Shown: piece after piece, positions 2,641 through 37,121 of the stretch | Layout of the letters: every line of letters starts with the position of its first letter | How positions within the stretch are numbered: position 1 is the first letter of the stretch | NCBI GenBank assembly: GCA_002269645.1 | Contig: NIVC01004534.1 | Location: forward strand, 1-42,906 | Length of the DNA: 42,906 nt | Reading direction: 5' to 3' | From: Macrostomum lignano | Taxonomy: Eukaryota | Notes under the pieces: generated by a model | Told to the model about the DNA's origin: nothing | The model's database searches: none | The model's input: the letters and a program-made list of their open reading frames with translations, nothing else | Program-made: the position numbers and the translations under genes

Positions 2641-2655
2641 GAAGACTGCCATGAA

Positions 2656-2891
<236 letters not shown>

Positions 2892-3213
2892 CTTTTCACC
2901 ATTCATTCTAATCGACGGTATATTTAGTATATAAAAATTGTTTTTTTTCGAAGTGCTATACGATTAGATGAAATGCCGGTATTGAAGGTAGGAGCATAAA
3001 AATCGATATTTGTGCGTAAAATAAAGTAGTTTGGATAAAATAAATGACAAAGTGAATAAATATTGTACTTCAATAGGGTAAAGTGAGCGCATTGGTTAAA
3101 ATGATTCAATGGTTTCCTGGCTGACACTTAAACTTATTGGGAGCCAGGAGGCTCTGTAAATTACGTTGCCGTGTAAATGCGGGCAGTATGCGAGAGCCTG
3201 GTTTATTTTGTAG

Positions 3214-3661: not shown

Positions 3662-3698
3662 AGAATCGGCCTGGGGCAGTGGGTGACTGAAGAATCGG
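3651..3698. repeat. Stub (~1.7 units) of the 29-bp minisatellite, left of the LINE
   Basis: GGGTGACTGAAGAATCGGCCTGGGGCAGTGGGTGACTGAAGAATCGG is the same unit as the 5011-5790 array. Confidence 0.9.
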
Positions 3699-7993: not shown

Positions 7994-8183
7994 TTACTCA
8001 TTGGCCATGCTGGGCTCATGACTGTGGCTGCTCTGGCTGCCCGGTCTGGGACTAATTGACCTCAGCAGGTCCTCGCCATTGTCAGCCAGAGATTGGTCGT
8101 CCGGTGTTAAGTCGACAAAATCGCTGCCTAAATCGCTGCGCGCCTGATGCGGCCCCTGGCGCTTAGATTTGGTCGGCCGATCC
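7994..8183 (-). CDS. MYH10-like: Myosin exon 21, non-helical tailpiece and stop (alternative in-frame acceptor at 8207)
   Basis: ctgtctcgcag|G GAT CGG completes the phase-2 Arg codon and gives DRPTKSKRQ...[20 protein letters not shown]...MANE*. Confidence 0.7.
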
Positions 8184-13565: not shown

Positions 13566-13600
<35 letters not shown>

Positions 13601-13601
13601 T

Positions 13602-13645
<44 letters not shown>

Positions 13646-13646
13646 T

Positions 13647-13684
<38 letters not shown>

Positions 13685-19600: not shown

Positions 19601-22600
19601 GTTAATGCATGACTGAGCGCCATATTGAGTGTTGTCGGGGCGCCATATTGTGTTATTGAGGCGCCATATTGAGCGTTGTTGGGGCGCCATATTGAGTGTT
19701 GTTGGGGCGCCATATTGAGTGTTGTTGGGGCGCCATATTGAGTGTTGTCGGGGTGCCATATTGAGTGTTGTTGGGGCGCCATATTGTGTTATTGAGGCGC
19801 CATAATGAGCGTTGTTGGGGCGCCATATTGAGTGTTGTTGGGGCGCCATATTGAGTGTTGTTGGGGCGCCATATTGTGTTATTGAGGCACCATAATGAGC
19901 GTTGTTGGGGCGCCATATTGAGTGTTGTTGGGGCGCCATATTGTGTTATTGAGGCACCATAATGAGCGTTGTTGGGGCGCCATATTGAGTGTTGTTGGGG
20001 CGCCATATTGAGTGTTGTTGGGGCGCCATATTGAGTGTTGTTGGGGCGCCATATTGAGTGTTGTCGGGGCGCCATGTTGTGTTATTGAGGCGTCATATTG
20101 AGTGTTGTTGGGGCGCCATATTGAGTGTTGTTGGGGCGCCATATTGAGTGTTGTTGGGGCGTCATATTGAGTGTTGTCGGGGCGCATATTGAGTGTTGTC
20201 GGGGCGCCATATTGAGTGTTTTTGAGGTGCCACATTGCGTTTCGAGGCGCCACATTGAGTGTCAAGGCGCCAATTTCGAGGCGCCACATTGAGTGTCAAG
20301 GCGCCAATTTCGAGGCGCCACACTGAGTGTCAAGGCGCCAATTTCGAGGCGCCACATTGAGTGTCGAGGCGCCTAATTAAGTGTCAAAGAGCAAACTGAG
20401 CATTGAGCCAATCTTGGCGGTCAAGCTTACCGCACCAGTAAGATCGCATAAAACATTCATAAATTCCAGACTAAAGGAGCACACATCCCAGGCAAGACTC
20501 ACCTGAAAGCCGACAATATATTCGGCCAGTCGTTTGTCCCGCTCCTCCTCAAGGAAGGCGACTACCCCGGCCCGGAAGAACACTTTGCTCTGGCCAATAC
20601 GGTAGAGCGTCGAGTCTAATTCCAGACTGCGGACCATTCGTTCAACAGCCTGCCGACCGTCCATAAAGCCTTTGGGTATGGCGCCAGGGCATAGAATCTC
20701 GTAGCGCTGCTTGAACTCGTGAAATAGAATCCTATTCGGGTAGCCTTGGCGACAGATCCGGATGCCTTCCAGTACGCCGTTGCAGCGCAGCTGCTCCAGC
20801 ACAAGCACACTGTCCAAGCGGCCAGCCCGTTTCTCGTGGTTCGGTATGATGCAGCGAACAAAATTAGGCGATGTATTGTTCAACACGGACATCAGCCTGG
20901 CTAGCTGCTCTTTGTAAAGCTGGCCGACTGTCCTGAACATGCCCTTCTTGGTGCGCTGACCGAACACAGTCTCGCTGGCTGCCTGAGCTGCCAGGCCAAC
21001 AACATTATCAACACCTTTCCACAGGCTCGCAACAAACTGATCGGACGAATTTTGCAACACGGCTACGACATTCTCATTGAGCGGATCCTGATTCTTCTGT
21101 AGCCAGTTGTCGGCTGAGTAATCCACTCTGCCGGCGTAGTGAAGAACGGAGAAACCGTTGATTGCGCTTTTCTTTAAACTGGCCTTAGCGAATTTCGGGT
21201 GCTGGTCGAAATTTCTCTGCAGCTTCTCAACGAAGCTCTTATCCGTAGCCTTGGGGAACCAGCACTCTTCGTCTAGGATGGCGAAGATGCCCATCTGTTG
21301 CTTGTCAATCATTGGCGTCTTCTCAATCAGATCGATGGTTGGCTGCAAGTCCAAACCAAAGTCGATGAATTTCCATTCGATGCCCTCTTTCTGGTACTCC
21401 TCCTGTTCCAGGATGAACATCGTGTGGTTAAACAGCTGCTGCAGCTTCTCGTTAGTGTAGTTAATGCACAGCTGTTCGAAACTATTCAGCTCGAATATTT
21501 CAAAGCCGGCAATGTCCAGGATGCCAATAAAGTGAGCACTTTGACGAGCTTTGCTGCGGTCCAATGACCGATTGATTCTGGTCACTAGCCAGCGGAACAG
21601 CCTCTCGTAGATGGCCTTGGAGATGGCTTCAACGGCGAACACTGCCTGTTCTTGGCTCTGCGATTTGTTAACAAACTCGCGGCCTACGCGAATGCGCGGC
21701 CTGAGGAAGGCGCGTACGAGATCGTTGACCTGCAGGCCGAGCAGGTGGCAGGCCTTCTGGGCCACTGGCCGGGGCGTGTTGGGTTGGAAGAGAGGCTCGA
21801 GATGAATTTTTATGTAGTTTGATGCATTCACTGTAAGTGACCGATACAAGCACCCTAGAGTCACTTGCAGGTAACACAGGTAAAATAGGAATTCAGTGAC
21901 TCTAGAAGACTCTAAAACTACGAAATTTCACGCTTCAAATCGCCAAAAAGTCATCAAAGGGTCGCTTAGGAGTCAATTTGAGGCGTTTTTTGTCTGCCTC
22001 TGAGTCGTATCTGAGGCGTGCTGGAGTCGCTGCAGAATCACTGAGTTTTGTGTCTAAAGCGCATCTGCGTCACTTTATGAATTAGAATCGCATTTCGCAG
22101 CCGCATAACTTTATTAGTCTACTTGAGTTAGTAGAGAATTAGGCGCTAACACAACGACTCTTGGATAACTTTTTGAGACTCTTTTACGATTCTGCAACTC
22201 ACGTGATGCGCTCGTGACTCAGTAGTCAACTCTCCGTCGCATTGCACTCGTTTGAGTCGTTAAAAAGTCACAAGAGTCACCAAAGAGTCGCTAGAGTCAC
22301 TAGTGAGTTGTCACGGTGACGGTTTCAACGGGGGAGGGCAGCTGCCGCCCTAGTGAAATTTGGGATTACTATTGCTTAACTACAATGGGGTCGGAGCCAT
22401 CCAGGGAAGGTCAAGAGGGTCAACTGCCCCTTCCCCTTTTTAGTGACAAAAGATGCTCAGGACAAAATTTCGCTTGCAGCGGTATAGTGGCACTAAAATC
22501 CAGCGCTTAAAAGTCGGTCACTGACAGTTGGGATGCAAAAATATAAAGCGCCTCATCTCACCCGAGCTGTCAGGCATGCTGGCCTGGTCGGCATTCCTGT

Positions 22601-25600
22601 CCTGCTTGAACACCATCGAGCCCAACTGTAGGACGGCGCTGATGACGCGAAATATGGCTGCAATTGTGCGCATGAACTAGCAGATTTTACCGATTGATTT
22701 CGCATTAGCCTACTGAGATAATTAGTGTAAATAGAGGGCAGAAAGTATAACTGTTTAGAATACTTGGCTAGTTTTAATATTTATCACTCGATACTTATAT
22801 ATGAACGATATAGATGCTCAGTGCTCTAAAAGAATGAGTCATGCGCATTAAAATTTTCATGTTGAAGCAAACCCGAAGGGAAATCGAAAGAATTCCTCGC
22901 AGATTACTGAGATTTGAAGCCTTTCCTAGAACTCGGTGCAAGATGGAAGACATAAAAATGCATAGCGGCATAAATCAATATATCTGAACTCTAAGGGTGC
23001 CCAGTCTGTACATGTAAATCCTATCACTCAATCTTACCGAAGTCTATGATGAATCTACCGAAGTCTATGATGAATCTACCGAAGTCTATGATGAATCTAC
23101 CGAAGTCCATAATAAACCTACCGAAGTCTATGATGAATCTACCGAAGTCTATGATGAATCTACCGAAGTCTATGATGAATCTACCGAAGTCTATGATGAA
23201 TCTACCGAAGTCTATGATGAATCTACCGAAGTCTATGATGAATCTACCGAAGTCTATGATGAATCTACCGAAGTCTATGATGAATCTACCGAAGTCTATG
23301 ATGAATCTACCGAAGTCTATGATGAATCTACCGAAGTCCAAATTAAACCTACCGAAGTCCATGATAAACCTACCGAAGTCTATTATTAACCTACCGAAGT
23401 CCATGATAAACCTACTGAATTATATGATAAATCTACCTAAATCGTTGATGAACATACTGTAGACAGACAATAAACCTACTGAAGACAAACGATAAACCTA
23501 CTGAAGAAAAACGATAAACCTACTGAAGTCAAACGATAAACCTACTGAAGACAAACGATATAAACCTACTGAAGACAAACGATAAACCTACTGAAGACAA
23601 ACGATAAACCTACCGAAGACAAACGATAAACCTACCGAAGACAAACGATAAACCTACTGAAGACAAACGATAAACCTACCGAAGACAAACGATAAACCTA
23701 CCGAAGACAAACGATAAACCTACCGAAGACAAACGATAAACCTACCGAAGACAACCCCTCTCAAAGCAGCTGCAGTTTCGGCCAACTTACAAACTCGCTC
23801 CTCCTGAGCGATGCCCATGATGTCCATGGCCTGCAGAGTCTCTTCAAACGCGGCATTATCGTCAACTCCAGGGACGGGCAGCTGACCGTTGCTCAAATAC
23901 TTATAAGCTGACGGCTGCTCAAGCAATAGCTGACTGCGCAGGTCCTCATCGCGGCTTGACAAAAGCTGATAGAATATGTGAAAGCAGCGCTCGTCCTTTG
24001 CTTGTTGAATAACTCGCGCCTTTTCTAGCAGGTCTACGTAGTTGCGTTAGTTTGTTACCATGGCGATGTAAGGAATATAGACCGATTGATTTGAATTAAA
24101 AGAATATCATAATTATCAAGTGTATAACTGATAGTCATTATCATATGCATTCCGGATACCGCTAGGATAATCATCATGACGGGCATTACTCATATAATCA
24201 TGAGAGGCATCAATCGAATAATCATCATGACGGGCATCACTCGGAAAATCATCATCATAGGCATCACTCGGATAATAATCATGACGGGCATTACTCGGAA
24301 AATCATCATGATAGGCATCACTCGGATAATCATCATGATAGGCATCACTCGGATAATCATCACGATAGGCATCACTCGGATAATCATCATGATAGGCATC
24401 ACTCGGATAATCGTCATGACAGAAATCACTCGGATAATCATCATGACAGAAATCACTCGGATAATCATCATGATAGGCATCACTCAGATAATCATCATGA
24501 TAGGCATCACTCGGATAATCATCACGATAGGCATCACTCGGATAATCATCATGATAGGCATCACTCGGATAATCGTCATGACAGAAATCACTCGGATAAT
24601 CATCATGACAGAAATCACTCGGATAATCATCATGACAGAAATCACTCGGATAAATCATCACGATAGGCATCACTCGGATAATAATCATGATAGGCATCAC
24701 TCGGATAATAATCATGATAGGCATCACTCGAATAATCGTCATGACAGAAATCACTCGGATAATCATCATGATAGGCATCACTCGGATAATAATCATCACG
24801 CGCATCACTCGGATAATCATCATGATAGGCATCACTCGAATAATCGTCATGACAGAAATCACTCGGATAATCATCATGATAGGCATCACTCGGATAATAA
24901 TCATGACGCGCATCACTCGGATAATCATCATGATAGGCATCACTCGAATAATCGTCATGACAGAAATCACTCGGATAATCATCATGATAGGCATCACTCG
25001 GATAATAATCATGACGCGCATCACTCGGATAATCATCATGATAGGCATCACTCGAATAATCGTCATGACAGAAATCACTCGGATAATCATCATGATAGGC
25101 ATCACTCGGATAATCATCATGATAGGCATCACTCGGATAATCATCATGATAGGCATCACTCGGATAATCATCATGATAGGCATCACTCGGATAATAATCA
25201 TGACGCGCATCACTCGGATAATCATCATGATAGGCATCACTCGAATAATCGTCATGACAGAAATCACTCGGATAATCATCATGATAGGCATCACTCGGAT
25301 AATCATCAAGATAGGCATCACTCGGATAATCATCATGATAGGCATCACTCGGATAATCATCATGATAGGCATCACTCGGATAATCATCAAGATAGGCATC
25401 ACTCGGATAATCATCATGATAGGCATCACTCGGATAATCATCAAGATTGGCATCACTCGAATAATCGTCATGACAGAAATCACTCGGATAATCATCATGA
25501 TAGGCATCACTCGGATAATCATCAAGATAGGCATCACTCGGATAATCATCATGATAGGCATCACTCGGATAATCATCAAGATAGGCATCACTCGAATAAT

Positions 25601-28600
25601 CGTCAAGATAGGCATCACTCGGATAAATCATCACGATGTGCACTGCAAAATACGCAGGGGCATACCAAAGAAAGACCCACTCGAGAGAGAATGGAAAACT
25701 GATTTAGGTTCGATTTTACTCCTAAACGATACAGAACCTTCCTGCGTATCAACCTCGAATTTGACCATCAGCCATAAATACCTTTACAAAAGCTTCAAAG
25801 CTGACAATACTTTAATAATTTTTTCCAAATCCGAGTTGCATAAAAGATTGACAGTCAGAACGCCACGCTGTCTCATCTCCCTATGGAAAATCAATAAACA
25901 GTTTGTCAGCGCGAACGGATAGAGAGTGGATGAGGTCCCGGCGACTTCAATGATAAACACACCCAAAGAAATGAAACAGCTAAACGCACGCGGAGTTCTA
26001 AAGTACACCGGGAACCGTGTGCTAGCGGAATACAAACATCGTTTTCAGATCTAACGTGGGATAAGGAATTTTAGAAAGATTTACGTCTAAGAACAGAAAT
26101 AATAAATTCGATCACTGAGCGCTGAGGGCCATTGCCACGAATTTCAGGGCTAAGCCTTTTTAAACCCTTTAAAACCTGCTTATAATCAATTTTACGATTG
26201 CAGGAGATTATAAATATAAGAATTGATTAATTAGCTAGGAACGGCTGAATTTTGAAATATCCCCTAACCCTATGCCGTACATGTATATGGATGGTACAGG
26301 CTTGTAAAACTAAGGTTGTGGAAATGGTCTGCCTCCCCCTTCCCCTAGCAACCATCTCTCTCTCTCCTTCCACTAACTTCCTTGTAAATATTTTCAAGCC
26401 CCATTGGACCCGGACTAGCTAGTAGTGTATGACAGTCCCCCCCTCCCAAGGACAACAGGCGGCCCACAGGCACACCTGGAATGGAGCGCTACAACCAATA
26501 GCGAAGAGAAAACGTCACTCTAAAAAAAGTTCAAAACCGAAATCGCGAATTCCGGCATAGTGCGGCTGCAGAGCTATTAAAGGTCGCCAATACGTCTTCC
26601 GTTGCGTATTCTTGGCATTTTTGCCAATTCGCGGAGGCAAACTACAGTATATCCTCTCCTCTAGGAAAATCTGGATATTAGTATTAAACATTAGAAAACT
26701 GTCCACTCTTGTAGCCAAGCATATAAGCATTGAATACCAGCCAGGAAAGACAGAAGAGCAGCAGAATTCCGGATGCCCAACTTAGTGAACTAATATTGTG
26801 TCACGTGTGACTGACTATATATGGCAACTAGCCTGAATCTGCGAATAGGCCCTACGACTAGTTGAATTTCCATAGCTATAAATAAACGCATCATTTCAGT
26901 TAGCTGCCGCGCCACAAAAATTAGTTCTGCACATAGCAGTGCGCGTGGAATGCTTTTGGTCACACCATGACAAATAGTTGGTAAACATCTGGTTGAAGAG
27001 AAAGTCCAGATGGATAGATCAGCTATGGCGAACGTGTTGCAGCAGCTGTTTTAAAACTTTTCCTTTTCCTAGCGCAGAAAAAAACTACGAGAAGCTGATT
27101 TGACGACTATTTGCTTTAGGAAAACTGAGAGCTTTTACATTTCCCTATAGGCCAGAAAAATAGCTTCCTATTGCACTAACTAATAGATTCTACCGATGCG
27201 TGTGACTAATGGAATTGAAAAACTTTTAACAAACACATTACTTTTTCCTGTGTTTGCACCGAAAAAAGTTACCAGAAAGAATGCATCTATTAGTTAAAGC
27301 TTTTCACCTGCGTTATGCATCAGGCTAAAAACCCTGGCCTCTATTTAGTTCAGAATAAATAGCGCAGGGATTTTTAAACTACGAATAGCTTTACCCAAGT
27401 GGACCACAAGTTTAATCACATGTGATTGGAACTGTAACTGGAACTGGAACTGTCACGTTACAGTTCCTGCTGCAATCACAGCACAAGTCCAATCACATTT
27501 TACAGTTCCTGCTGCAATCACAGCACAAGTCCAATCACATTTTACAGTTCCTGCTGCAATCACAGCACAAGTCCAATCACATTTTACAGTTCCTGCTGCA
27601 ATCACAGCACAAGTCCAATCACATTTTACAGTTCCTGCTGCAATCACAGCACAAGTCCAATCACATTTTACAGTTCCTGCTGCAATCACAGCACAAGTCC
27701 AATCACATTTTACAGTTCCTGCTGCAATCACAGCACAAGTCCAATCACATTTTACAGTTCCTGCTGCAATCACAGCACAAGTCCAATCACATTTTACAGT
27801 TCCTGCTGCAATCACAGCACAAGTTAATCACATTTTACAGTTCCTGCTTTAGTTTAAAATGATCAATATTCAATTATCTGTGTTCAATATTTCAATGATA
27901 AAGTAAGCGAGTCTATGAACAAGAGAAGGAAATGCAACAAATTAGGAACTTTTCAGCCAAAGGCATACAAAAATATCTCCACACATGGCATAGGTCTAGC
28001 AGACAGTTAAACAGCAACTAGGACTAAAAGCAGAAGAAAGGCATGACTAATTATTCTGACTTGTGGGAAGGGGTTGGTGCACAGACGAGGTCGAGATTAG
28101 GAAATTCAGAACGAAGCTGGGCCAAAATCTTTCCAGACCGAAGAGAGAGAGAGGGGTGATGAAGGTTACCTGAGGGAGGTTGCCGCCTACCAACTTGTGG
28201 ATCTCCTGTGTACCCACCCCCGACCCTTCAGGATCCACCTACTAATTCCCATATTGCTGCACCATTACCAAGGCGGTACTGCCCTCCGTTATGCTCTCCT
28301 GTCTGTCAGGTCTATCCATACACCGGTACAGCCTTCCTTTCGGAGGGTATCCCTTCGGGATAAGTAAGAATGAACGTTAAGAAAGGGGGGCAGACAGGCA
28401 GAGAGAGGAGAGCGGGAAGAAACTGGACTAGCTAAAGATACAGCATGCCGCAGACAGGAAATGTGCCAATATACTCGACTGAACATTACAATGCGATAAT
28501 GCAATACCTAACAGAACGCTAGCTAACGCCTATCTAATCTAGCTGGCTGATGAAGTCCTACTTTAAAAAATTCGGGAAGGATGATTTAGTAAGCGCCAGG

Positions 28601-28887
28601 ACTGGCAGACAGACTGGCAGACTGAGTGCAACTCCTCGGTAGCTTGCTGACTCCCTTAAGGGTTGTCAGCCAATTCAGAGGCGTTTTAGTGACAAAGTGA
28701 TTTCAGCTAGACGGTAACAACTTTTGGGAATAATAATTGGAAACTGCACTGAGTGAGTCATCCCTCAGTCCATTGTGGCTTAGAATATCCACACATACTA
28801 GACAATGACATTTTTTTCTAATGCTAAAACTTAACTAGCAGAGAAAGCCAACCAATAAGATAAAGATCTCGATTAGCAAAAAAGATA

Positions 28888-28983
<96 letters not shown>

Positions 28984-29005
28984 CTAGATGGATAGATAGA
29001 TAGAT

Positions 29006-29053
<48 letters not shown>

Positions 29054-29103
29054 GGATAGATAGATAGATAGATAGATACATAGATAGATAGATAGATAGA
29101 TAT

Positions 29104-29160
<57 letters not shown>

Positions 29161-29412
29161 CAGGCACAAAAAGAAACTGACACCTCACAAGGATAAGCAA
29201 GCCATTTAGTGTCCTAGCAGATTCACAAAAATGAGGTGTTGATCGCCCCAGAAACAGAGCAAACCAAACCAACACGGCTTAGAAGACGACAGAAACAGAA
29301 ACGACTAGCTAGGCAAAGGTGCTGCGGTCCTCTCCCCAGTAACTTCATTCTTTTATGGTAGACAAGCAAGCAAGGACGCAGCAACAGCAGAAGCAACAGT
29401 CCTTCAGCATTA

Positions 29413-29480
<68 letters not shown>

Positions 29481-30048
29481 GGCAAAATTCTTTCATTGCC
29501 ATTCGGTCGCGCAGACCCTTATCCCCCTATCTACAGGCCCGTTTCGGCCTCGGGCATGGCGCTTCATCCACTCGACCGGGGGGGGGGGGGCTCTTCCATG
29601 AAATTTCGCCATCCCGTGGCCGAACCAGCGCTCGCTCATTCCGTCTTTCTCTCTCTTGCAGCATTTGGAAAATAAGTGCATTCGGGACACAGACTGGCAG
29701 TGTGAGAGAGGCAAAGTGGCCGGCTGCGATTGGGAATAATAATAATAATAGAACAAAACTTAACGCTCTTATAGCTGGCCACAATAATTTTATTAAAAGT
29801 TATCATATAGAAAAGGATACAAGTCTCGATATTGGCGCCAGCGATGAAGCCAGTGGTATCAAAGTTGATGCGAATAAACTTGCCCTAAAAAGTAATTGAA
29901 TAATTGCAAGCAAAAATTTCATCTTAAAACTAGTTTATTAAGCCTGGCTATAAAGTACAGAATGAATTATACTTCAAGAGAGAATAAAGTGGCCAAAGAA
30001 ATCTAAGATGCTACCCCATGAAACGCCCGACCACAAGCAAATCCTACC

Positions 30049-30096
<48 letters not shown>

Positions 30097-30189
30097 GACT
30101 AACTAACTAACTAACTGACTAACTAACTAACTAAATAACAAACTAACTAACTAACTAACTGACTAACTAACTAACTGACTAACTAACTG

Positions 30190-30232
<43 letters not shown>

Positions 30233-30249
30233 GACTAACTGACTAACTG

Positions 30250-30292
<43 letters not shown>

Positions 30293-30309
30293 GACTAACT
30301 AACTAACTG

Positions 30310-30364
<55 letters not shown>

Positions 30365-30441
30365 GACTAACTAACTAACTGACTGACTAACTAACTGACT
30401 GACTGACTGACTGACTAACTAACTAACTAACTGACTGACTG

Positions 30442-30472
<31 letters not shown>

Positions 30473-30509
30473 GACTGACTAACTAACTAACTGACTAACT
30501 AACTAACTG

Positions 30510-30548
<39 letters not shown>

Positions 30549-30625
30549 GACTAACTAACTAACTGACTGACTAACTAACTGACTGACTGACTGACTGACT
30601 AACTAACTAACTAACTGACTGACTG

Positions 30626-30656
<31 letters not shown>

Positions 30657-30677
30657 GACTGACTAACTAACTAACTG

Positions 30678-30756
<79 letters not shown>

Positions 30757-33700
30757 GACTGACTGAAAAGATACACATACAGCGCGCATGTGGGTGCAAC
30801 ACGGAATGATTTGGCTGAAGGCGTTGCTCTATGGTGAACGCTGAGGAGTTGCTTTTACACACGCGAAATGTCACTATAGCTAAATCACCTAATTTCATAA
30901 ACGCTAAGTTTCATAAACGCAAAACTTCACAACCGCTAATTTTTTACATTCACTTTCATAAATGCGAAACTTGCGGTTGTGAATGTATGAATGTAGGGGT
31001 GACCTTTAGCGGTTGTGAAGTTTCGCGTTTGTGAACCCCCCTCTCCATAAGCTGAGCCAGATTAACCAAGAACCATAAACCAGAAAGCAGCAAACGGAAC
31101 AAAGGAAACTTGATAAAAAAGACTTACAAATCTAGAAGAATTGTCGTTCTTGATAGTTTTAGCATTGCCGAATGCCTCCAGTATCGGATTGGCTTGCAGC
31201 AGTTGCAGCTCCAATTCGCCCTTGAAGATTAAAATGTTGAATTAAGAGATTAACACAAGTTAGCATTCGTATACTCTGACCGAAGGACTGAAAGTACTAA
31301 CCGCAGCCAATTGTGCTTAACTAGCAGGCTAAAAGTTATTATTATTTATTTTTGTCAAAGGCTTAATCGAAAAAAATCATCATTAGTTTATTGCAGTGCA
31401 CACAATCACAGGAATTAATAATTAGTGTAGTTAATTAAACATTGCTATTGGTATTGCGAAGTAATGGAAAAATCAAATTACAAACAGCCCTCACAGAAGT
31501 TGCCGTTGTTGTATCGAGATTCGAGACGTAACAACAACAACTTCCAAATGATCCTTGAAAAATGCGAATCAATGAATAAGTATACAGTTACCAAATAGAC
31601 ATTAGAAAACTGGACACCAAGAAGATAGTGTAATAAGCTTTTCTATACACTATATAGTAGATTAAATTTAATACCATCAATGCTGCGTCTCTTATGACGG
31701 CGTCACTTTCAAATGGCAAATTATCTGAAAATAATTAATTTTACTAATCTTAAAACTCGTTTAACAGTAGGAATACCAAGCCATTTTTCCGCCCGTAGAA
31801 CTACCAAGAGGGGGAATCCCCCTCTGACAATTTTTTTTGCTGCGCCGGAACGGAGCAACACAGGCACACGAAATTCAAGAACACGGGCTAACTTTTTGTT
31901 GCGCACCTTCTCAAACAAGAATCAAGTCGCCAGCCCTTCGGACCGTCGAGATATTCGACGATTCTGCCAGAAGGTCGGATTCTTCCCATAAGTGCTAGTG
32001 TATTCAGTACACCCCTGTGCGCCAATTAGCACTGCGCCTCACTGCAGCCTTGCCAAGTCTCCAAATTTCATCAGCACGTCGAACACATGTGTCTGCATCA
32101 GTTCTGACTTCGTTGGTCACTAGCCTTCACCCAAGTGGAGCTTCTGGACCCTCAACAGCTGTGGCACCAGGTGACTATGGACACCCTGATGCGGATTTCT
32201 CTAGTTTCGCCGATCAAGCCTCGACAGTGGGCAAGAATCAACCGCCAGACATTCTCAGCTAGTCTCTCAAGCATTCCGTCATCATCCCGACGCCGTCGGC
32301 TCCTTCAACAGATGCCACCTGTTGAAGGTGCCGACGGCTAGTGACCAACGAAGTCAGAACTGATGCAGACACATGTGTTCGACGAGCTGATGAAATTTGG
32401 AGGCTTGGCAAGGCTGCACTGAGGCGCAGTGCTGATTGGCGCACAGGGGTGTGCTGAATACACTAGCGCTTATGGGAAAAATCCGACCTTCTGGCAGAAT
32501 CGTCTAATATCTCGACGGTCCGAAGGGCTGGCGACTTGATTCTTGTTTGAGAAGGTGCGCAACAAAAAGTTAGCCCGTGTTCTTGAATTTCGTGTGCCTG
32601 CGTTGCTCCGTTCCGGCGCAGCAAAAAAATTGTCAGAGGGGGGGGGAATTTCCCCCCCCCCTCTTGGTAGTTCTACTGTTAATTATTTAAAGCCGGGCTC
32701 AAATAATAAGAGGGCAAACTAAATTGAAGCTGCTATAAACTCTAGCATAAAGGCGCGCACACAGGAAACTTAATAAATAAAAAATCTATACTAATAAATA
32801 ATTATGCAGGCGCATTCTTGAAAACAAGTTCTACACAGTTGCGAACAACTTACAATATTGACGGCCTTAACCTGGAAAAATTAATTATATACATACAATT
32901 CAAGCCAACCTAACCAAAGGCGGTTCACACAAGTATACAATACAAGACGGCTGCAATCTACTAGCCTAGCTAGCCGCTAGCGGACAAATTAAAGCTGGGG
33001 TCGGTGAACTTTTTACCGCAAGGGCCAGATTAAGAATCCAGCTCATGACTGCGGGCCAGATGAGAGTGGAAAGGAGAGGGAATGAGGGAGAGAGGAGAGA
33101 GGTGACAAAAGAGAGGGGAGGTAAGATGCGAGATGAAAGAGGCCAGGAAAGAAGAGATGAGTGAGAGGAAGATAAGAGGAAAGGAGAGGAGAGGAGAGGA
33201 AAGGAGAGAAGAGGAGGTGAGAGGGAAGAAGAGATGAGATGAGAGAGTAGAGTAGAGGAGCTGAGAGGAGAGGAGAGAGGAGAGGAGAGGAAAGAGATGA
33301 GAGGAGATAACTGGGAAGAGATAAACCTTGAGCGGGCCGGATTGCCATTCTGAGGTGTCCAAGGACTCGAGGGCCCGATAGAGGCTTTGCGGCCCGCGGG
33401 CCGGAGTTCTCCTACCCATGAATTAAAGCGACAACTCACCTGCGACTGAGCAATGGAATTAGTGGCTGGCGTTGAGCCGCCGGTTTTCTGCGATTTGACA
33501 GACGAGGCTACGTGGGCCAGGTACTGAATGACCTTCTTTGTGTTTTCAGTTTTGCCTGCGCCGGATTCGCCTCTGTGTCGAATTTGGAATGGATTGAATA
33601 CAGCCAATGCTTTGCCCCATCCAAGCTTTTAATTTTAAGCTGGGGATAAACTATATGCACTTCCTTTTCGATAACTGAGTCGAATGAAAGTGCGATAGGG

Positions 33701-33783
33701 GCAGGCAGGCAAGACAGGAAGGTAAAGAGATACATATAGACAGTTAGAGACGCTACCGCAGAGACCGACAGGCACAGACAGGC

Positions 33784-33834
<51 letters not shown>

Positions 33835-33873
33835 TAGACAGACAGACACACAGACAGACAGACAGACAGACAC

Positions 33874-33924
<51 letters not shown>

Positions 33925-34069
33925 CACAGAAAGACAGACAGACAGACAGACAGACGCTAAGTCAGACAGACACTAAGTCAGACAGACACTAAGACAGACA
34001 GACAGACAGACAGATAGACAGAGACAGACAGACACTAAGTCAGACAGACACTAAATCAGACAGACACTA

Positions 34070-34126
<57 letters not shown>

Positions 34127-34133
34127 CACAGAC

Positions 34134-34198
<65 letters not shown>

Positions 34199-34255
34199 CA
34201 CAGACAGACAGGCAGACACACAGGCAGACACACAGACAGACAGACAGACAGACAC

Positions 34256-34290
<35 letters not shown>

Positions 34291-37121
34291 TACAGACAGA
34301 GAGACAGACAGACAGACAGACAGAGAGACAGACAGAAAGACAGACAGACAGACAGACAGACAGAGACAGACAGACAGACACACAGAAAGACAGACAGACA
34401 CGCAGCCAGAGAGTCTGATTGATTGACCAAGAGTTTGATGCCAGAAGTGTCAGAAAAGTTGCCAGTTGCCACCAGCGCACACAACAGCAAGCCTTACGTG
34501 CACAGGATGCTCTGATCATCGCGAGCTTCCAGCATAGACCGGTAGGCCTGATCGGCGATAGCATAAATGTGTGGCGGCCGTTCCGATCGCTTTTTCCCTT
34601 TGTAGGCTTCAATCACGGGCTCGTTATAGATTGGCAGCCGCTTGTAGGGATTGACCACTACGCAGAACAGGCCTGAGTAGGTCTACAATAGCATTTTGGG
34701 TAGATTTAAAAAAAATTCATTTTTAATAAACGGTAGAAACAATGCATTGCATTGGCAAGTTGCTACAGAAAAAGTACTTTTCATTACTGCGCACACCGCC
34801 TTTGGAGGGATGAGAAATAATCTAGTGTGAAAGAAAACATAATACTTCTTAATTTTTTACCATTTTTCTACACTGCACTGCACTGCTTTTATTAACACAT
34901 TCATCTTATTTACATTGGCTAGTTTTTCTGCCCTTTGTCTTAAATGTTAAGTCAACAAAATGTGTAGAAATAACCACATAAAATTTCTACATTCTTGTAG
35001 ACACATCAGGGTTATTTTGCAACATTTTTAAAACTATAAACTCGAATACTGTAGCTCCTTCGGGATTGACACTTGGCTTTGCAGATCCACAGAGAATCGG
35101 GTTATCAAACCAGACAAAAATCATAAAATAATCTTAGATTGACATACTATATTTAAATAACTATTTCTAGTTTTAGATAGTTTAGAGGTAGGACACTGTA
35201 TGTACCTTGGCATACTTTAGGGGACATTTATCCCATAATTAGCAAGAGGCATTATTTCCCATTTTGTTGACTCCCCTGAGTAGACAGATAAGTGTGCAGA
35301 TAATATAGTCATATATATAAGCACACACTGACATAGTATATAGTGGCATTGTATACATAGTATACATAGTATTTTTTATTATGCATTGGAGATTGGCCCT
35401 TAAAGGTGTTAATAGCATGATCAGACCCAAGCTAAGATTCCAATTTAGCCTTAAATTAATATGATTGCACTAGGAATTAAACCTCTTATTGGCATATGAG
35501 ATCACCAAGCAAGACCATTAGACTATGGCTCCCTTTTATTAGAAGAATCTATAAATAATTGTGTTTATTTATTGTATTGCTAACTGCTAAAAGACCATTG
35601 ATATAATTTTAATTGAAAATTAATTGTAAAATAATTATTTTATTTTTATTTTCATTATTAGCTAAGACAATAAATAATTTTGTTTTTACTACTTTTTTAA
35701 ATGATATACTTCTTATAGATCAATTCAAAAAGAGACCTAATTCTTCAGGCTTTAAAGAATAAATTATTATGCTTCATTTATTAGCACCACGATTAATATA
35801 TTGATTTATATTATATCAGATTAGATTAATATATATTATACATAGTTAATAAATAATTTTTATTGTTTAAAATGGTTTTCAAGCTATAAAATTTAAGTTG
35901 GCCCAGAAACATTGTTATTAGAAATTGAAGTTTTTGTGTTTAAGGCTAGTCATTAACTTTTATTGTAATTATTTAAAAAAAGTAATTTAAAAAATTGATT
36001 TTAAAAAATTGATTTTTGAATTGTAAAAGTTCTAGACTATAGTAGGCCCCCTATAATTGTCAAGGAAACCTTATTAGAATCAATCTAAAAATTTACAAAC
36101 ACTCATTCTAATCTAAGCATAAAAGAATGCAAGTAAAGGTAAATATTTATACTATAAAGTATTAGTTTGGAATTTGATTATAAAATTTCAAATTGTATTC
36201 TAGGCTTTTTACTAGGCATAATTTTATATAAAGCATTTGTTTTTAACAATTTTATAAAAGTATATGCATCTCATACTTGCTGGTTTGGCCTTATTATACA
36301 AAGGTTGTACAAATGGAAATCAATTGGTATACAAGCACGACAATAGATTTCCTGCCTCACATTTAAGACAATATTTTTATAAATCCCTTTTGCCTTTAAT
36401 CTATTTATATAATAAAATATAAAAAAAATAAATCTAAAATTCGAATGAAATAATTTTTTTTCTGCAACAAATTGTTTTTACTACCGGGGCTAATTTATGA
36501 GTTTTTATTGTGAATATGCAGTAAGACAACATTAATATATATATATTTTAAAAGATATATATTCTTTATATAATTGAAAACAATAAATTAAAAATAAATA
36601 ATCTTTTAATTCAATTATTTTAAAAGTCTAAATTAAGCCAAGAACATATTCGGGTTTTGGATGCACTTTTGCAGATAGGATCAAATATAAAAATGTGATT
36701 TTTAATTTTTGAATGATATTCACACAAAAAACTTAGGCCCAAATATTGTCTAAAAACTTACATAAATAAGATCAGAATAGTATCTGTCACGAAGGTTGTG
36801 AAGAACAGATGCTTCGTTTAGGTTTGACAGTTCCGACATGTCCTCCTTCTTCGTAAACTTAGGAGGATTCATTTTTTGTATATCATCCTTGGAAACTTTT
36901 CGAGTTTCACCAGTATCAGAAACCTCAACAATAACAACATCGTCTCCCTCTTCTTGCCGAACACTAGCGGAAACAAAACCCTGAGTCTCATGTGGGATCC
37001 AAACTAGTTTTTTCGCAACCCATTCCTGCTCAAGAGAGGGGTCACTAATTATGCTGTTTGTGCCAGAAACTTCAAGAAATTTGAAGGCCGGATCTTTCTG
37101 CAATAGATCGACGGACATCAT
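7994..37121 (-). CDS. MYH10-like: Myosin II heavy chain, non-muscle/smooth type (MYH9/MYH10/zipper-like), 21 coding exons, ~2010 aa
   Basis: Exons (minus): 37121-36762, 34682-34498, 33572-33440, 31220-31128, 29884-29821, 24033-23791, 22657-22562, 21764-20503, 19539-19384, 18891-18520, 17882-17640, 17574-17327, 16873-16270, 16014-15784, 15621-15422, 15161-14900, 14215-13886, 13416-13195, 12926-12606, 11624-11407, 8183-7994. All junctions are GT-AG and phase-compatible; total 6033 nt. Motifs: P-loop GESGAGKT, switch I NDNSSRF, switch [26 protein letters not shown] region, [17 protein letters not shown], long heptad rod and acidic tailpiece. Confidence 0.96.
8279..9004. repeat. 44-bp minisatellite, ~16 copies
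   Basis: Unit TTGGATTGCTA(A/G)TCTA(G/A)CTCTCACTGACGAGTCTATAGATGAG(A/G). Confidence 0.97.
9575..10522. repeat. 29/31-bp minisatellite GGGGAGTGGCGGT(C/T)ACACAC(AG)AAACACACT, with a 60-bp dimer
   Basis: The lines starting 9601, 9661, 9721 and 9781 are nearly identical at a 60-bp period; this explains several repetitive ORFs. Confidence 0.97.
10905..11335. repeat. Purine-rich (GGAGA-type) low-complexity tract
   Basis: Almost only A/G on the plus strand; intronic. Confidence 0.9.
11407..11624 (-). CDS. MYH10-like: Myosin exon 20 (end of rod)
   Basis: cag|GTT GAC GAC GAG ([11 protein letters not shown]...VLRKQNQ) to CG|gtgagt. Confidence 0.92.
11850..12430. repeat. TTAGTGTCTGTC-type 12-bp repeat with a 69-bp higher-order unit
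   Basis: TGCCTTATTGTCTTTTAGG recurs at 12081, 12150 and 12219. Confidence 0.92.
12606..12926 (-). CDS. MYH10-like: Myosin exon 19 (rod)
   Basis: cag|[23 protein letters not shown]...VKELQQQ|gtgtg, 321 nt. Confidence 0.93.
13195..13416 (-). CDS. MYH10-like: Myosin exon 18 (rod)
   Basis: cag|[16 protein letters not shown]...EESAQ|gtttga, 222 nt. Confidence 0.92.
13515..13858. repeat. (CTA)n trinucleotide microsatellite with CTG/TTA/CAA variants
   Basis: Direct reading; source of the poly-S, poly-L and poly-V ORFs. Confidence 0.97.
13886..14215 (-). CDS. MYH10-like: Myosin exon 17 (rod)
   Basis: tag|[20 protein letters not shown]...VTHYK|gtttgt, 330 nt. Confidence 0.93.
14272..14878. repeat. 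19-bp minisatellite ATGGGGATCAGC(CCAAGT/GCACCT/CCAAAT), with a 57-bp trimer
   Basis: ATGGGG at 19-bp spacing (14469, 14488, 14507), with variants cycling in threes. Confidence 0.96.
14900..15161 (-). CDS. MYH10-like: Myosin exon 16 (rod)
   Basis: cag|A GAA CGC GAG ([10 protein letters not shown]...EDARLRLE)|gtttgt, 262 nt. Confidence 0.93.
15232..15420. repeat. (GACA)n/(GACACA)n microsatellite
   Basis: Direct reading; fills most of the intron between exons 15 and 16. Confidence 0.96.
15422..15621 (-). CDS. MYH10-like: Myosin exon 15 (rod)
   Basis: cag|[20 protein letters not shown]...RHKKFD...TVEA AG|gtctgt, 200 nt. Confidence 0.92.
15784..16014 (-). CDS. MYH10-like: Myosin exon 14 (rod)
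   Basis: aacag|[21 protein letters not shown]...RLEEAQ|gtgcgg, 231 nt. Confidence 0.9.
16270..16873 (-). CDS. MYH10-like: Myosin exon 13 (rod)
   Basis: cag|A GAC CGA ([23 protein letters not shown]...[11 protein letters not shown])|gtgcgc, 604 nt. Confidence 0.94.
16882..17220. repeat. GGGGAAGATGGTGAC-core minisatellite (~19-bp and ~30-bp units)
   Basis: Direct tandem copies inside the exon 12-13 intron. Confidence 0.93.
17327..17574 (-). CDS. MYH10-like: Myosin exon 12 (rod)
   Basis: aag|[13 protein letters not shown]...[12 protein letters not shown]|gtgaga, 248 nt; the preceding intron is 65 nt. Confidence 0.93.
17640..17882 (-). CDS. MYH10-like: Myosin exon 11 (rod)
   Basis: cag|[14 protein letters not shown]...[27 protein letters not shown]|gtgagc, 243 nt. 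Confidence 0.94.
17905..18468. repeat. 29-bp minisatellite CTGAGGATCTGGGAGGCTGGCTGCTCAG(C/T), ~19 copies
   Basis: Direct tandem copies; shortened 21-bp units at the right end. Confidence 0.97.
18520..18891 (-). CDS. MYH10-like: Myosin exon 10 (start of rod, S2)
   Basis: tag|[15 protein letters not shown]...EEAKQKAQ|gtttgt, 372 nt. Confidence 0.94.
19065..19325. repeat. 20-bp minisatellite GGGTTCATA(T/C)(C/T)GGTTCT(A/C)GT
   Basis: Direct tandem copies. Confidence 0.92.
19384..19539 (-). CDS. MYH10-like: Myosin exon 9 (IQ motifs/neck)
   Basis: cag|[15 protein letters not shown]...[28 protein letters not shown]|gtgagt, 156 nt. Confidence 0.95.
19617..20372. repeat. 23/19-bp minisatellite GGGGCGCCATATTG(AG)TGTT(GTT/ATT)
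   Basis: Direct tandem copies with a shared GGCGCCA core, degrading at the right end. Confidence 0.96.
20503..21764 (-). CDS. MYH10-like: Myosin exon 8 (bulk of motor domain: switch II, relay, actin-binding region, converter)
   Basis: cag|TG GCC CAG AAG through [33 protein letters not shown] and [23 protein letters not shown] to IVGFQ|gtgagt, 1262 nt. Confidence 0.97.
21855..22301. mobile_element. Possible MITE-like element rich in GAGTC/GACTC motifs, with short inverted ends
   Basis: AGTGACTCTAG at 21895-21905 is inverted relative to CTAGAGTCACT at 21855-21865 and 22291-22301. No target-site duplication could be assigned. Confidence 0.35.
22562..22657 (-). CDS. MYH10-like: Myosin exon 7 (motor)
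   Basis: cag|CC ATA TTT CGC ([31 protein letters not shown]) G|gtgaga, 96 nt. Confidence 0.94.
23034..23753. repeat. Two adjoining related minisatellites: 21-bp CTACCGAAGTCTATGATGAAT (23034-23445) and 22-bp CCTAC(T/C)GAAGACAAACGATAAA (23470-23753)
   Basis: Direct tandem copies sharing a CTAC(C/T)GAAG core. Confidence 0.96.
23791..24033 (-). CDS. MYH10-like: Myosin exon 6 (motor)
   Basis: cgtag|AC CTG CTA GAA AAG ([25 protein letters not shown]...[12 protein letters not shown]) T|gtaagt, 243 nt. Confidence 0.95.
24165..25630. repeat. 27-bp minisatellite CATCACTCGGATAATCATCATGATAGG, ~1.45 kb
   Basis: Direct tandem copies with recurring variant units; source of 330-500 aa repetitive ORFs. Confidence 0.97.
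27455..27845. repeat. 42-bp minisatellite TTACAGTTCCTGCTGCAATCACAGCACAAGTCCAATCACATT, ~9 copies
   Basis: Near-identical tandem copies (14-aa period in the ORF track). Confidence 0.97.
28888..29161. repeat. (GATA)n microsatellite
   Basis: Direct reading. Confidence 0.98.
29414..29478. repeat. (AC)n microsatellite
   Basis: Direct reading. Confidence 0.98.
29821..29884 (-). CDS. MYH10-like: Myosin exon 5 (motor)
   Basis: tttttag|[22 protein letters not shown]|gtatcctttt, 64 nt. Confidence 0.95.
30050..30766. repeat. (ACTA)n/(ACTG)n compound microsatellite, ~715 bp
   Basis: Direct reading. Confidence 0.98.
30910..31035. repeat. Short inverted repeat (30-bp arms), possible small MITE remnant
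   Basis: TTCATAAACGCAAAACTTCACAACCGCTAA (30910-30939) pairs with TTAGCGGTTGTGAAGTTTCGCGTTTGTGAA (31006-31035), with 2 differences. Confidence 0.75.
31128..31220 (-). CDS. MYH10-like: Myosin exon 4 (switch I)
   Basis: caag|[31 protein letters not shown]|gtaagt, 93 nt. Confidence 0.96.
31765..32678. mobile_element. 914-bp non-autonomous foldback DNA element (MITE-like) with ~330-bp inverted arms, flanked by TTAA
   Basis: Arms 31795-32125 and 32336-32676 are reverse complements (9 substitutions counted by eye, plus G/C-run length differences). The ends read TTAA|CAGTAG...CTACTG|TTAA (TTAA at 31761-31764 and 32679-32682). Confidence 0.88.
32854..32871 (-). CDS. MYH10-like: Candidate 18-nt cassette microexon (VKAVNI) in myosin loop 1
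   Basis: aattaatttttccag|GTT AAG GCC GTC AAT ATT|gtaagt; symmetric phase 0, between exons 3 and 4. Confidence 0.65.
33060..33310. repeat. Purine-rich (GAGAG/GGAGA) low-complexity tract
   Basis: Direct reading. Confidence 0.88.
33440..33572 (-). CDS. MYH10-like: Myosin exon 3 (P-loop, loop 1)
   Basis: cacag|A GGC GAA TCC ([24 protein letters not shown]...IAQSQ)|gtgagt, 133 nt. Confidence 0.96.
33770..34400. repeat. (GACA)n microsatellite with interruptions
   Basis: Direct reading; source of the SVCL-repeat ORFs. Confidence 0.97.
34498..34682 (-). CDS. MYH10-like: Myosin exon 2 (motor)
   Basis: tgtag|[19 protein letters not shown]...[28 protein letters not shown]|gtaagg, 185 nt. Confidence 0.96.
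36762..37121 (-). CDS. MYH10-like: Myosin first coding exon (N-terminal SH3-like domain)
   Basis: ATG at 37121; [13 protein letters not shown]...[41 protein letters not shown]|gtaagt, 360 nt. Confidence 0.95.

What the first reader, a model, noticed from the sequence alone, without database searches (positions are those of the whole stretch)
32854..32871. Hidden 18-nt microexon (VKAVNI) in myosin loop 1
Seen: a strong acceptor (aattaatttttccag) and a perfect GTAAGT donor bracket exactly six sense codons in the phase-0 intron between ...IAQSQ and GELELQLL.... Known: this position after the P-loop (25/50-kDa junction) is where MYH11 (SM-B, 7 aa) and MYH10 (B1, 10 aa) take alternative inserts; the SM-B insert speeds ADP release and motility. 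Inference: a conserved or convergent kinetic switch that gene predictors would miss.
Basis: partly seen in the sequence, partly recalled or inferred. Interest (0 to 1): 0.7.

Follow-up and report, generated by a model that had tools for sequence, protein, structure and literature searches.

The report
Conserved flatworm myosin loop-1 microexon
The 18-base mini-exon is a real part of the flatworm Macrostomum lignano's non-muscle myosin II gene: it is already in the public annotation and is shared with tapeworms and flukes, but nobody has yet shown that it is switched on and off or changes motor speed.

Summary
The window is contig NIVC01004534.1 of Macrostomum lignano (assembly Mlig_3_7). It carries a 22-exon non-muscle/smooth-type myosin II heavy-chain gene on the minus strand. 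The 18 nt at 32871-32854 (VKAVNI) sit exactly as described, in the phase-0 intron between ...IAQSQ and GELELQ...

Splice signals alone do not prove the exon: 46 intronic decoys in this gene score as well. Two other lines of evidence do.
- The GenBank protein annotated on this contig (PAA47213.1) already contains VKAVNI, and that annotation was built only from RNA-seq and transcript assemblies.
- An orthologous 18-nt, phase-0 microexon lies at the same site in Hymenolepis diminuta (SNEVNI) and Dicrocoelium dendriticum (SKNVNI). The last 9 nt plus the donor are identical between Macrostomum and Hymenolepis.

VKAVNI aligns with the SM-B insert of gizzard smooth-muscle myosin. Gar MYH10 also has an 18-nt microexon (SGSLLY) at this spot.

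So the exon is real and conserved, but not hidden. Other database models skip it, which hints at alternative splicing without proving it. The kinetic-switch role is an inference by analogy. I rate it a new member of a known kind, of modest interest.

The parts
32854..32871 (-). 18-nt microexon (exon 4), GTTAAGGCCGTCAATATT = VKAVNI, phase 0 on both sides. It forms the C-terminal end of myosin loop 1.
   Evidence: sequence and model; included in GenBank protein PAA47213.1, which is annotated on this contig; orthologous 18-nt xxxVNI exons in Hymenolepis and Dicrocoelium.
32872..32886 (-). 3' splice site of the microexon (aattaatttttccag)
   Evidence: PWM score 1.5 bits and pyrimidine fraction 0.60. 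Identical in the two other genomic copies.
32848..32853 (-). 5' splice site of the microexon (gtaagt)
   Evidence: The sequence GTCAATATT|gtaagtt is identical in H. diminuta.
33440..33572 (-). Exon 3: P-loop (GESGAGKT) and the N-terminal part of loop 1, ending ...NSIAQSQ|gtgagt
   Evidence: Matches P0363 and P0364.
31128..31220 (-). Exon 5: [31 protein letters not shown], the conserved helix that follows loop 1
   Evidence: Aligned to PDB myosin II chains.
7994..37121 (-). Whole CDS of the non-muscle/smooth-type myosin II heavy-chain gene BOX15_Mlig001176g5 (22 coding exons)
   Evidence: annotated gene range L003 5786-34913 = window 37121-7994; Pfam Myosin_N, Myosin_head, Myosin_tail_1.
31761..32682 (.). 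Foldback/MITE-like element in the intron downstream of the microexon. It has 297-nt arms that are 97% complementary, and TTAA at both ends. It is not part of the exon but lies about 170 nt from its donor.
   Evidence: Present in the window and in copy L002, absent from copy L001.

Best explanation
Window 32871-32854 (minus strand) is a genuine, expressed and evolutionarily conserved 18-nt cassette microexon of the Macrostomum lignano non-muscle/smooth-type myosin II heavy-chain gene.

Shown: splicing exon 3 (ends 33440) to the microexon and the microexon to exon 5 (starts 31220) adds six residues, VKAVNI, to the C-terminal end of loop 1. They sit directly before the conserved [21 protein letters not shown] helix next to the nucleotide pocket. 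The inclusion form is the one deposited in GenBank from RNA evidence. The exon's size, phase, position and xxxVNI ending are shared with a cestode and a trematode.

Inferred: the exon is probably optional, because skipping keeps the frame and skipped models exist. By analogy with the vertebrate SM-B, B1 and C1 inserts at the same site, it probably tunes nucleotide-pocket kinetics (ADP release, ATPase rate, sliding speed) for particular cell types.
For: 1. The sequence and a clean 22-exon GT-AG model.
2. The window is NIVC01004534.1 of GCA_002269645.1. Its annotated product PAA47213.1 (P0363, 2016 aa) reads ...[19 protein letters not shown]... and equals my model plus one extra N-terminal Met.
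3. The GenBank annotation of Mlig_3_7 was made only from RNA evidence: STAR/StringTie/TACO, a BLAT-mapped de novo transcriptome, and TransDecoder (PMC5730564).
4. The two other genomic copies, L001 and L002, keep the exon and both splice sites unchanged.
5. Orthologous microexons in the same phase-0 intron: H. diminuta ttactag|TCAAATGAAGTCAATATT|gtaagtt (SNEVNI) and D. dendriticum tttttag|TCGAAGAACGTCAACATT|gtaagtg (SKNVNI).
6. Macrostomum and Hymenolepis share 16 of 16 identical bases over the last 9 exon nt plus the donor. The chance of a VNI ending is about 1.3-1.8e-4 per candidate, with 12 (18-nt) or 77 (any length) candidates in the Macrostomum introns.
7. VKAVNI aligns with the QGPSFSY insert of gizzard smooth-muscle myosin 1BR2.
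8. Mini-exons at this site occur in Bombus (24 nt and 30 nt) and gar MYH10 (30 nt B1 and 18 nt SGSLLY), and annotated isoforms differ by them.
9. Skipped models exist for the same gene: P0241, P0364, P0365.
10. The B1 insert is reported to raise actin-activated ATPase and in vitro motility (PMC3535348).
Against: - No reads or junction counts could be examined, so the inclusion level and any tissue specificity are unknown.
- The skipped models come from UniProt/WormBase ParaSite annotation of an older assembly. I could not verify their evidential basis. They may be predictor omissions, in which case the exon could be constitutive.
- By this gene's own PWM the splice sites are unremarkable, and 46 decoys match them.
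- The three Macrostomum copies differ by only 1-2% in the introns, so within-species conservation carries little information.
- I found no shared intronic regulator motif (Rbfox GCAUG, or UGC near the 3' splice site) among the flatworm loci.
- The kinetic effect rests purely on analogy. Loop-1 inserts do not all behave alike.
Confidence: 0.85

Rival explanations
1. The microexon is real but constitutive in M. lignano. It is always spliced in, so it is simply part of loop 1 and not a switch. The database models that lack it are gene-prediction omissions.
For: The only model known to be RNA-derived includes it. In H. diminuta one assembly's model skips the exon although the DNA contains it, which shows that predictors do drop it. 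The donor is a consensus GTAAGT. The Bombus 24-nt TPSPALII exon at the equivalent place is present in all Bombus isoforms listed.
Against: Three independent UniProt models of the same gene skip it. The length is a multiple of three and both flanks are phase 0, so skipping is harmless. Homologues in insects and vertebrates have annotated isoforms that differ by mini-exons at this exact site. The acceptor is weak by the gene's own standard, which is typical of regulated exons.
Confidence: 0.3
2. It is a chance pseudo-exon: an AG and a GTAAGT happen to bracket six sense codons, and the annotated inclusion is a transcript-assembly artefact.
For: The gene's introns hold 668 in-frame AG...GT candidates, and 46 score at least as well. 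The assembly is redundant and multimapping reads were allowed (PMC5730564).
Against: An 18-nt, phase-0 exon ending in VNI lies at the same site in a cestode and a trematode, with the last 9 nt plus the donor identical to Hymenolepis. The joint chance is about 1e-4 to 1e-6. It is included in a model built from RNA. It is unchanged in all three gene copies.
Confidence: 0.02
3. The resemblance to the vertebrate SM-B, C1 and SGSLLY inserts is convergent. Flatworms and vertebrates each evolved a small loop-1 exon independently, because the phase-0 intron before GELE is a permissive place to add residues.
For: There is no sequence similarity between VKAVNI and QGPSFSY or SGSLLY beyond a hydrophobic end. 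Insert number and length vary among lineages (18, 21, 24 and 30 nt). Loop 1 is fast-evolving.
Against: The intron, phase and immediate adjacency to the GELE exon are the same in flatworms, a bee and a fish. Flatworms and gar MYH10 share the same 18-nt size. A [VIF]-N-[IL] ending recurs in flatworms (VNI), molluscs and other lophotrochozoans (INL) and some arthropods (FNI).
Confidence: 0.45

Closest known systems
Smooth-muscle myosin MYH11 SM-B insert (7 aa, QGPSFAY/QGPSFSY)
   Same: Same protein family and the same site: the C-terminal end of loop 1, directly before GELE.QLL. HMMER aligns VKAVNI with QGPSFSY of 1BR2. Both are tiny in-frame cassettes with a hydrophobic end. The seven-residue insert is reported to confer functional differences between intestinal and vascular myosin (Kelley et al. 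1993, listed in the references of PMC2120948). The faster ADP release and motility are from my own knowledge.
   Different: 6 versus 7 residues, with no sequence similarity. Tissue-specific alternative use and the kinetic effect are demonstrated for SM-B and undemonstrated here.
Non-muscle myosin II-B (MYH10) loop-1 inserts: B1 (10 aa) and the adjacent 6-aa SGSLLY-type exon in fish and reptile isoforms
   Same: Gar MYH10 has an 18-nt, phase-0 microexon (ctacag|AGTGGATCCCTGTTGTAT|gtgagt) immediately upstream of the GELER exon. That is the same size, phase and position as the flatworm exon. Annotated isoforms X1, X2 and X3 differ by it. B1 is spliced into loop 1, and B1-inserted HMM has higher ATPase and motility (PMC3535348).
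   Different: Vertebrates have a second (30-nt B1) cassette in the same intron, whereas M. lignano shows only one. The sequences are unrelated (SGSLLY versus VKAVNI). The neuronal specificity known for B1 is unknown here.
Non-muscle myosin II-C (MYH14) C1 insert (8 aa)
   Same: [quoted passage not shown]
   Different: 24 nt versus 18 nt. C1 is broadly expressed and linked to tumour-cell cytokinesis. Nothing comparable is known here.
Flatworm orthologues: Hymenolepis diminuta SNEVNI and Dicrocoelium dendriticum SKNVNI microexons
   Same: 18 nt, phase 0, the same intron, a xxxVNI ending and a GTAAGT donor. 12-13 of 18 exon bases are identical.
   Different: The first three codons differ. Flanking introns are much shorter in the parasites (76 and 381 nt in Hymenolepis, against 568 and 1633 nt here).
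Insect non-muscle myosin (zipper orthologues), e.g. Bombus impatiens
   Same: Mini-exons lie in the same intron: a 24-nt TPSPALII exon and a 30-nt GSGNVSDKFA cassette with a +9-nt alternative donor. Annotated isoforms differ by them. From memory, and not verified here: Mansfield et al. 1996 reported alternative splicing of Drosophila zipper at the 25/50K junction.
   Different: Different lengths and sequences, and two exons rather than one.

Membership tests
Loop-1 (25/50-kDa junction) alternative insert of non-muscle/smooth-muscle myosin II (SM-B / B1 / C1 type) | The host gene is a non-muscle/smooth-type class II myosin heavy chain | tested here: met
   Best full-length relatives are non-muscle myosin heavy chains, MYH10 and MYH9. 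Pfam Myosin_N, Myosin_head and Myosin_tail_1. Best PDB matches are MYH11, MYH10 and MYH14.
Loop-1 (25/50-kDa junction) alternative insert of non-muscle/smooth-muscle myosin II (SM-B / B1 / C1 type) | The insert lies in loop 1, between the helix after the P-loop (VIQYLA.VASS) and [21 protein letters not shown] | tested here: met
   It aligns with QGPSFSY of 1BR2.
Loop-1 (25/50-kDa junction) alternative insert of non-muscle/smooth-muscle myosin II (SM-B / B1 / C1 type) | Encoded by its own small cassette exon, with length a multiple of three, so inclusion and skipping are both in frame | tested here: met
   18 nt, AG/GT-bounded, phase 0 on both sides. Same architecture in gar MYH10, Bombus and two other flatworms.
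Loop-1 (25/50-kDa junction) alternative insert of non-muscle/smooth-muscle myosin II (SM-B / B1 / C1 type) | Both inserted and non-inserted mRNAs are made (alternative splicing) | tested here: inconclusive
   Inclusion is in the RNA-derived GenBank model. Skipping appears only in UniProt/WormBase models whose evidence I could not verify. No reads are available with these tools.
Loop-1 (25/50-kDa junction) alternative insert of non-muscle/smooth-muscle myosin II (SM-B / B1 / C1 type) | Tissue- or cell-type-specific inclusion | not testable with these tools
   Needs RNA-seq by tissue or cell type, or in situ detection.
Loop-1 (25/50-kDa junction) alternative insert of non-muscle/smooth-muscle myosin II (SM-B / B1 / C1 type) | The insert changes motor kinetics (ADP release, ATPase, velocity) | not testable with these tools
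   Needs recombinant HMM with and without the insert. Only analogy is available (PMC3535348).
Platyhelminth xxxVNI loop-1 microexon (orthology group defined here) | An 18-nt, phase-0 exon immediately upstream of the GELE exon, ending GTC AAY ATT (V-N-I) with a GTAAGT donor | tested here: met
   M. lignano, H. diminuta (two assemblies) and D. dendriticum.
Neural microexon programme dependent on SRRM3/4 (eMIC) | A UGC motif close to the 3' splice site, between the polypyrimidine tract and the AG (defining feature recalled from my own knowledge) | tested here: not met
   No UGC within 40 nt upstream of the AG in M. lignano or H. diminuta. One at -31 in Dicrocoelium and in Bombus.
Neural microexon programme dependent on SRRM3/4 (eMIC) | Neuron-specific inclusion | not testable with these tools
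   No expression data are accessible.

The most novel reading that the evidence does not exclude
The 18-nt exon is the flatworm copy of a single ancestral bilaterian loop-1 microexon. This exon would always be the last mini-exon before the GELE exon, phase 0, about 18-24 nt, with a hydrophobic C-terminal end. It would survive as xxxVNI in flatworms, xDINL in molluscs, xFNI or ALII in arthropods, and SGSLLY (MYH10), QGPSFAY (MYH11 SM-B) and C1 (MYH14) in vertebrates. That would make it one of the oldest alternatively spliced microexons known, and a universal kinetic tuner of non-muscle and smooth-muscle myosin II that predates the vertebrate gene family.
Probability: 0.35. Interest if true: 0.55.

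Novelty: new member of a known kind. Interest (0 to 1): 0.3.

Why it matters
Loop-1 inserts are the classic example of tuning a myosin motor by a few residues next to the nucleotide pocket, but they have been studied almost only in vertebrates.

A size-, phase- and position-matched microexon conserved from an early-branching free-living flatworm to tapeworms and flukes shows that this tuning site is under long-term selection outside vertebrates.

Macrostomum lignano is transgenic-tractable and regenerates. It therefore offers a simple animal in which deleting or forcing the exon could test what the insert does in vivo.

The result is also practical for annotation. Several public flatworm gene models silently drop this exon, even though the M. 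lignano GenBank record has it.

Tried and rejected
1. Two protein searches with partial queries (363 aa and 103 aa) returned only fragments at 72% identity or less. The tool lists only proteins up to about 1.75 times the query length, so full-length myosins were invisible. A full-length reconstruction fixed this.
2. Comparing the three M. lignano genomic copies is a weak test of constraint. The exon is identical, but the introns are also 98-99% identical.
3. Splice-site strength as evidence was rejected: the decoy count is high and the acceptor scores low.
4. A search for shared splicing-regulator motifs (Rbfox GCAUG, UGC near the 3' splice site) found nothing consistent.
5. Look-ups gave no DNA for P0241 (UniProt-only), for the oyster isoforms P0253 and P0252 (not the longest isoform on record), or for Sinanodonta P0290 (gene longer than 100 kb). 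I therefore could not test whether the molluscan ...DINL piece is a separate microexon.
6. No DNA was available for the 72%-identical M. lignano paralogue, whose two models differ by 14 aa in loop 1 (P0242 versus P0367).
7. Literature searches did not retrieve the Drosophila zipper splicing paper or the first M. lignano genome paper. Statements about them are marked as memory or as unverified.
8. I considered structure prediction and dropped it, because it cannot reveal kinetics.

Full report
**Observation.** On the minus strand the window reads ...aattaatttttccag|GTTAAGGCCGTCAATATT|gtaagttg. The 18 nt are window 32871-32854 and encode VKAVNI. The upstream exon ends at 33440 with ...IAQSQ|gtgagt, and the downstream exon begins at 31220 with caag|GGCGAATTGGAG (GELE...). 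I rebuilt the whole gene from reading frames and splice junctions. It has 22 coding exons, all GT-AG, and one open frame of 2015 aa from 37118 to 7994. It has the N-terminal SH3-like domain, the motor, an IQ neck and a long coiled-coil tail, and the microexon is exon 4.

**Is it more than chance on sequence alone? No.** I trained donor and acceptor PWMs on the gene's 20 other introns. The microexon donor scores 4.7 bits, against 1.6-12.9 for the real donors. The acceptor scores 1.5 bits, below all 20 real acceptors at 3.8-13.7. The 23,095 nt of introns contain 668 frame-preserving, stop-free AG...GT candidates of 9-51 nt. Of these, 46 equal or beat the microexon on both scores; many lie in tandem repeats and roughly a dozen are unique. 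The PWM is crude, but the message is clear: 'good sites around six sense codons' is common in this gene.

**Identity of the locus.** Two searches with partial queries gave only fragments at 72% identity or less, because the tool lists only proteins up to about 1.75 times the query length. The full-length query hit Macrostomum lignano at 100% identity (P0241). Reading that cluster showed P0363 = GenBank PAA47213.1, 'hypothetical protein BOX15_Mlig001176g5', 2016 aa, on a contig of exactly 42,906 bp. The contig look-up confirmed that the window is NIVC01004534.1 of assembly GCA_002269645.1 (Mlig_3_7). The annotated gene spans window 37121-7994.

**The microexon is already annotated, from RNA.**
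- P0363 reads ...[30 protein letters not shown]... It equals my model plus one extra N-terminal Met.
- The genome paper states that the GenBank annotation derives from a genome-guided transcriptome. That transcriptome used STAR-mapped RNA-seq assembled with StringTie, merged by TACO with a BLAT-mapped de novo transcriptome, trimmed by TBONE, with ORFs called by TransDecoder. No ab initio predictor was involved (PMC5730564).
- The inclusion form therefore reflects an assembled transcript. The exon is real at the RNA level and is not 'hidden'.
- Three UniProt models of the same gene lack the six residues: A0A1I8HGS0, A0A1I8HSV9 (which shares this copy's amino-acid variants) and A0A1I8IIB4. I could not verify how those models were made, so they hint at skipping without proving it.

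**Conservation within the species.** Two other genomic copies (L001 = NIVC01001124.1, L002 = NIVC01001672.1) carry the identical exon and splice sites. The introns differ by only 1-2%, as expected from the assembly's known redundancy, so this is weak evidence.

**Conservation across flatworms is the decisive evidence.**
- Among the fragments already retrieved, two Hymenolepis diminuta models differ by exactly six residues at this site...SKLN-SNEVNI-GELEAQ (P0025) against ...SKLN-GELEAQ (P0098). A Dicrocoelium dendriticum fragment reads ...SKNVNI-GELEAQ.
- On genomic DNA, H. diminuta has ttactag|TCAAATGAAGTCAATATT|gtaagtt and D. dendriticum has tttttag|TCGAAGAACGTCAACATT|gtaagtg.
- Both are 18 nt and phase 0, and both are the last exon before the GELE exon.
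- Macrostomum and Hymenolepis are identical over the last 9 exon nt plus 7 donor nt (16 of 16). Overall, 12-13 of 18 exon bases match between species.
- The chance that a candidate ends in V-N-I is about 1.3-1.8e-4. There are 12 eighteen-nt candidates and 77 of any length in the Macrostomum introns, and 6 and 62 in Dicrocoelium. A coincidental match in both comparisons is therefore of order 1e-4 to 1e-6 (a rough estimate).
- The H. diminuta model P0098 skips the exon although its own contig contains it (L007).

**Wider comparison.**
- HMMER aligns VKAVNI with the QGPSFSY insert of chicken gizzard smooth-muscle myosin (1BR2), directly before GELE. This is the SM-B site.
- In Bombus impatiens the same intron holds a 24-nt exon (TPSPALII) and a 30-nt cassette (GSGNVSDKFA) with a +9-nt alternative donor (VIN). 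Annotated isoforms X1, X2 and X6 differ by the cassette.
- In gar MYH10 the intron holds the 30-nt B1 exon (PESPKPVKLQ) and then an 18-nt, phase-0 microexon (SGSLLY) immediately before the GELER exon. Isoforms X1, X2 and X3 differ by these.
- A hydrophobic-Asn-Ile/Leu ending recurs: VNI in flatworms, INL in molluscs and other lophotrochozoans, FNI in some arthropods.
- This fits an ancient mini-exon at this site, but convergence is not excluded. I could not obtain mollusc DNA.

**Mechanism.**
- Shown: inclusion inserts six residues at the C-terminal end of loop 1, next to the nucleotide pocket. Both inclusion and skipping preserve the frame.
- Established for relatives: B1 and C1 are spliced into loop 1, and B1-inserted HMM has higher actin-activated ATPase and faster in vitro motility (PMC3535348). 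The seven-residue smooth-muscle insert confers functional differences between intestinal and vascular myosins (Kelley et al. 1993, cited in PMC2120948).
- Inferred: the flatworm insert likewise tunes ADP release and speed, and is used in particular cells. Nothing here tests that.
- I found no shared Rbfox or UGC motif that would point to a regulator.

**Verdict.** The exon is real, conserved and at the SM-B/B1 site. It is already in the GenBank CDS of this contig, its splice signals are not exceptional, and its alternative use and kinetic role remain unproven. I classify it as a new member of a known kind (a loop-1 insert of non-muscle/smooth-type myosin II) and rate interest at about 0.3. The most novel reading left open is a single bilaterian-wide ancestral loop-1 microexon (probability about 0.35).

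Noticed in passing
window 38414-40286 (-): An Hsp70 coding region just upstream of the myosin gene is split across three reading frames. Pfam HSP70 positions 7-219 are in one ORF, 239-597 in another, and the [21 protein letters not shown] piece in a third. It is not among the called genes of the contig. It is either a frameshifted pseudogene or carries long-read indel errors.
   Followed up: partly
window 31761-32682: A foldback/MITE-like element of about 920 bp lies in the intron about 170 nt downstream of the microexon. It has 297-nt arms that are 97% complementary, a 204-nt spacer, and TTAA at both ends. It is present in this copy and in L002 but absent from copy L001, so it is a recent or polymorphic insertion. 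In pre-mRNA it would form a hairpin of about 300 bp.
   Followed up: partly
window 31675-31677 (-); L001 and L002 position 10001-10003: In the two other gene copies, the GenBank models (PAA71967.1 and PAA65229.1, 1785 aa) start with an ATG|gtatta mini first-exon inside intron 4, spliced to exon 5 (M+GELELQ...). This predicts an N-terminally truncated myosin without the P-loop. It could be an internal promoter or trans-splice product, or an artefact of cutting transcriptional units.
   Followed up: partly
window 33060-33310 (-): A CT-rich low-complexity tract of about 250 nt (ctcctctcc...) lies 190-440 nt upstream of the microexon. It is conserved with small length changes in all three copies. 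It could bind a PTB-like factor, or it may simply be one of the many simple repeats in this genome.
   Followed up: no
proteins P0242 and P0367 (M. lignano paralogue, 72% identical): The paralogue's two database models differ by 14 residues in loop 1 (...AQSGP|GGRSGSVSASLSHG|ELEQQ). Loop-1 variation may therefore exist in both flatworm non-muscle myosin II genes. No genomic DNA was obtainable.
   Followed up: no
L009 35844-35873 (gar MYH10): The 30-nt B1 exon (PESPKPVKLQ) is followed by gcaagt, a GC-type donor rather than GT.
   Followed up: no
window 1-5000 (-): Retroelement remains: long ORFs, one with an RNase H domain (Pfam PF00075, 4059-4466), next to long (CT)n and other tandem repeats. 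Many introns of the myosin gene are filled with micro- and minisatellites, for example 9600-10500, 23000-23400, 24100-25700 and 33640-34450.
   Followed up: partly
L007 712-729 (H. diminuta, GCA_900618445.1): The annotated protein P0098 omits the SNEVNI microexon although the contig contains it with intact splice sites. The newer assembly's model P0025 includes it. This is an example of the exon being dropped by a predictor.
   Followed up: yes
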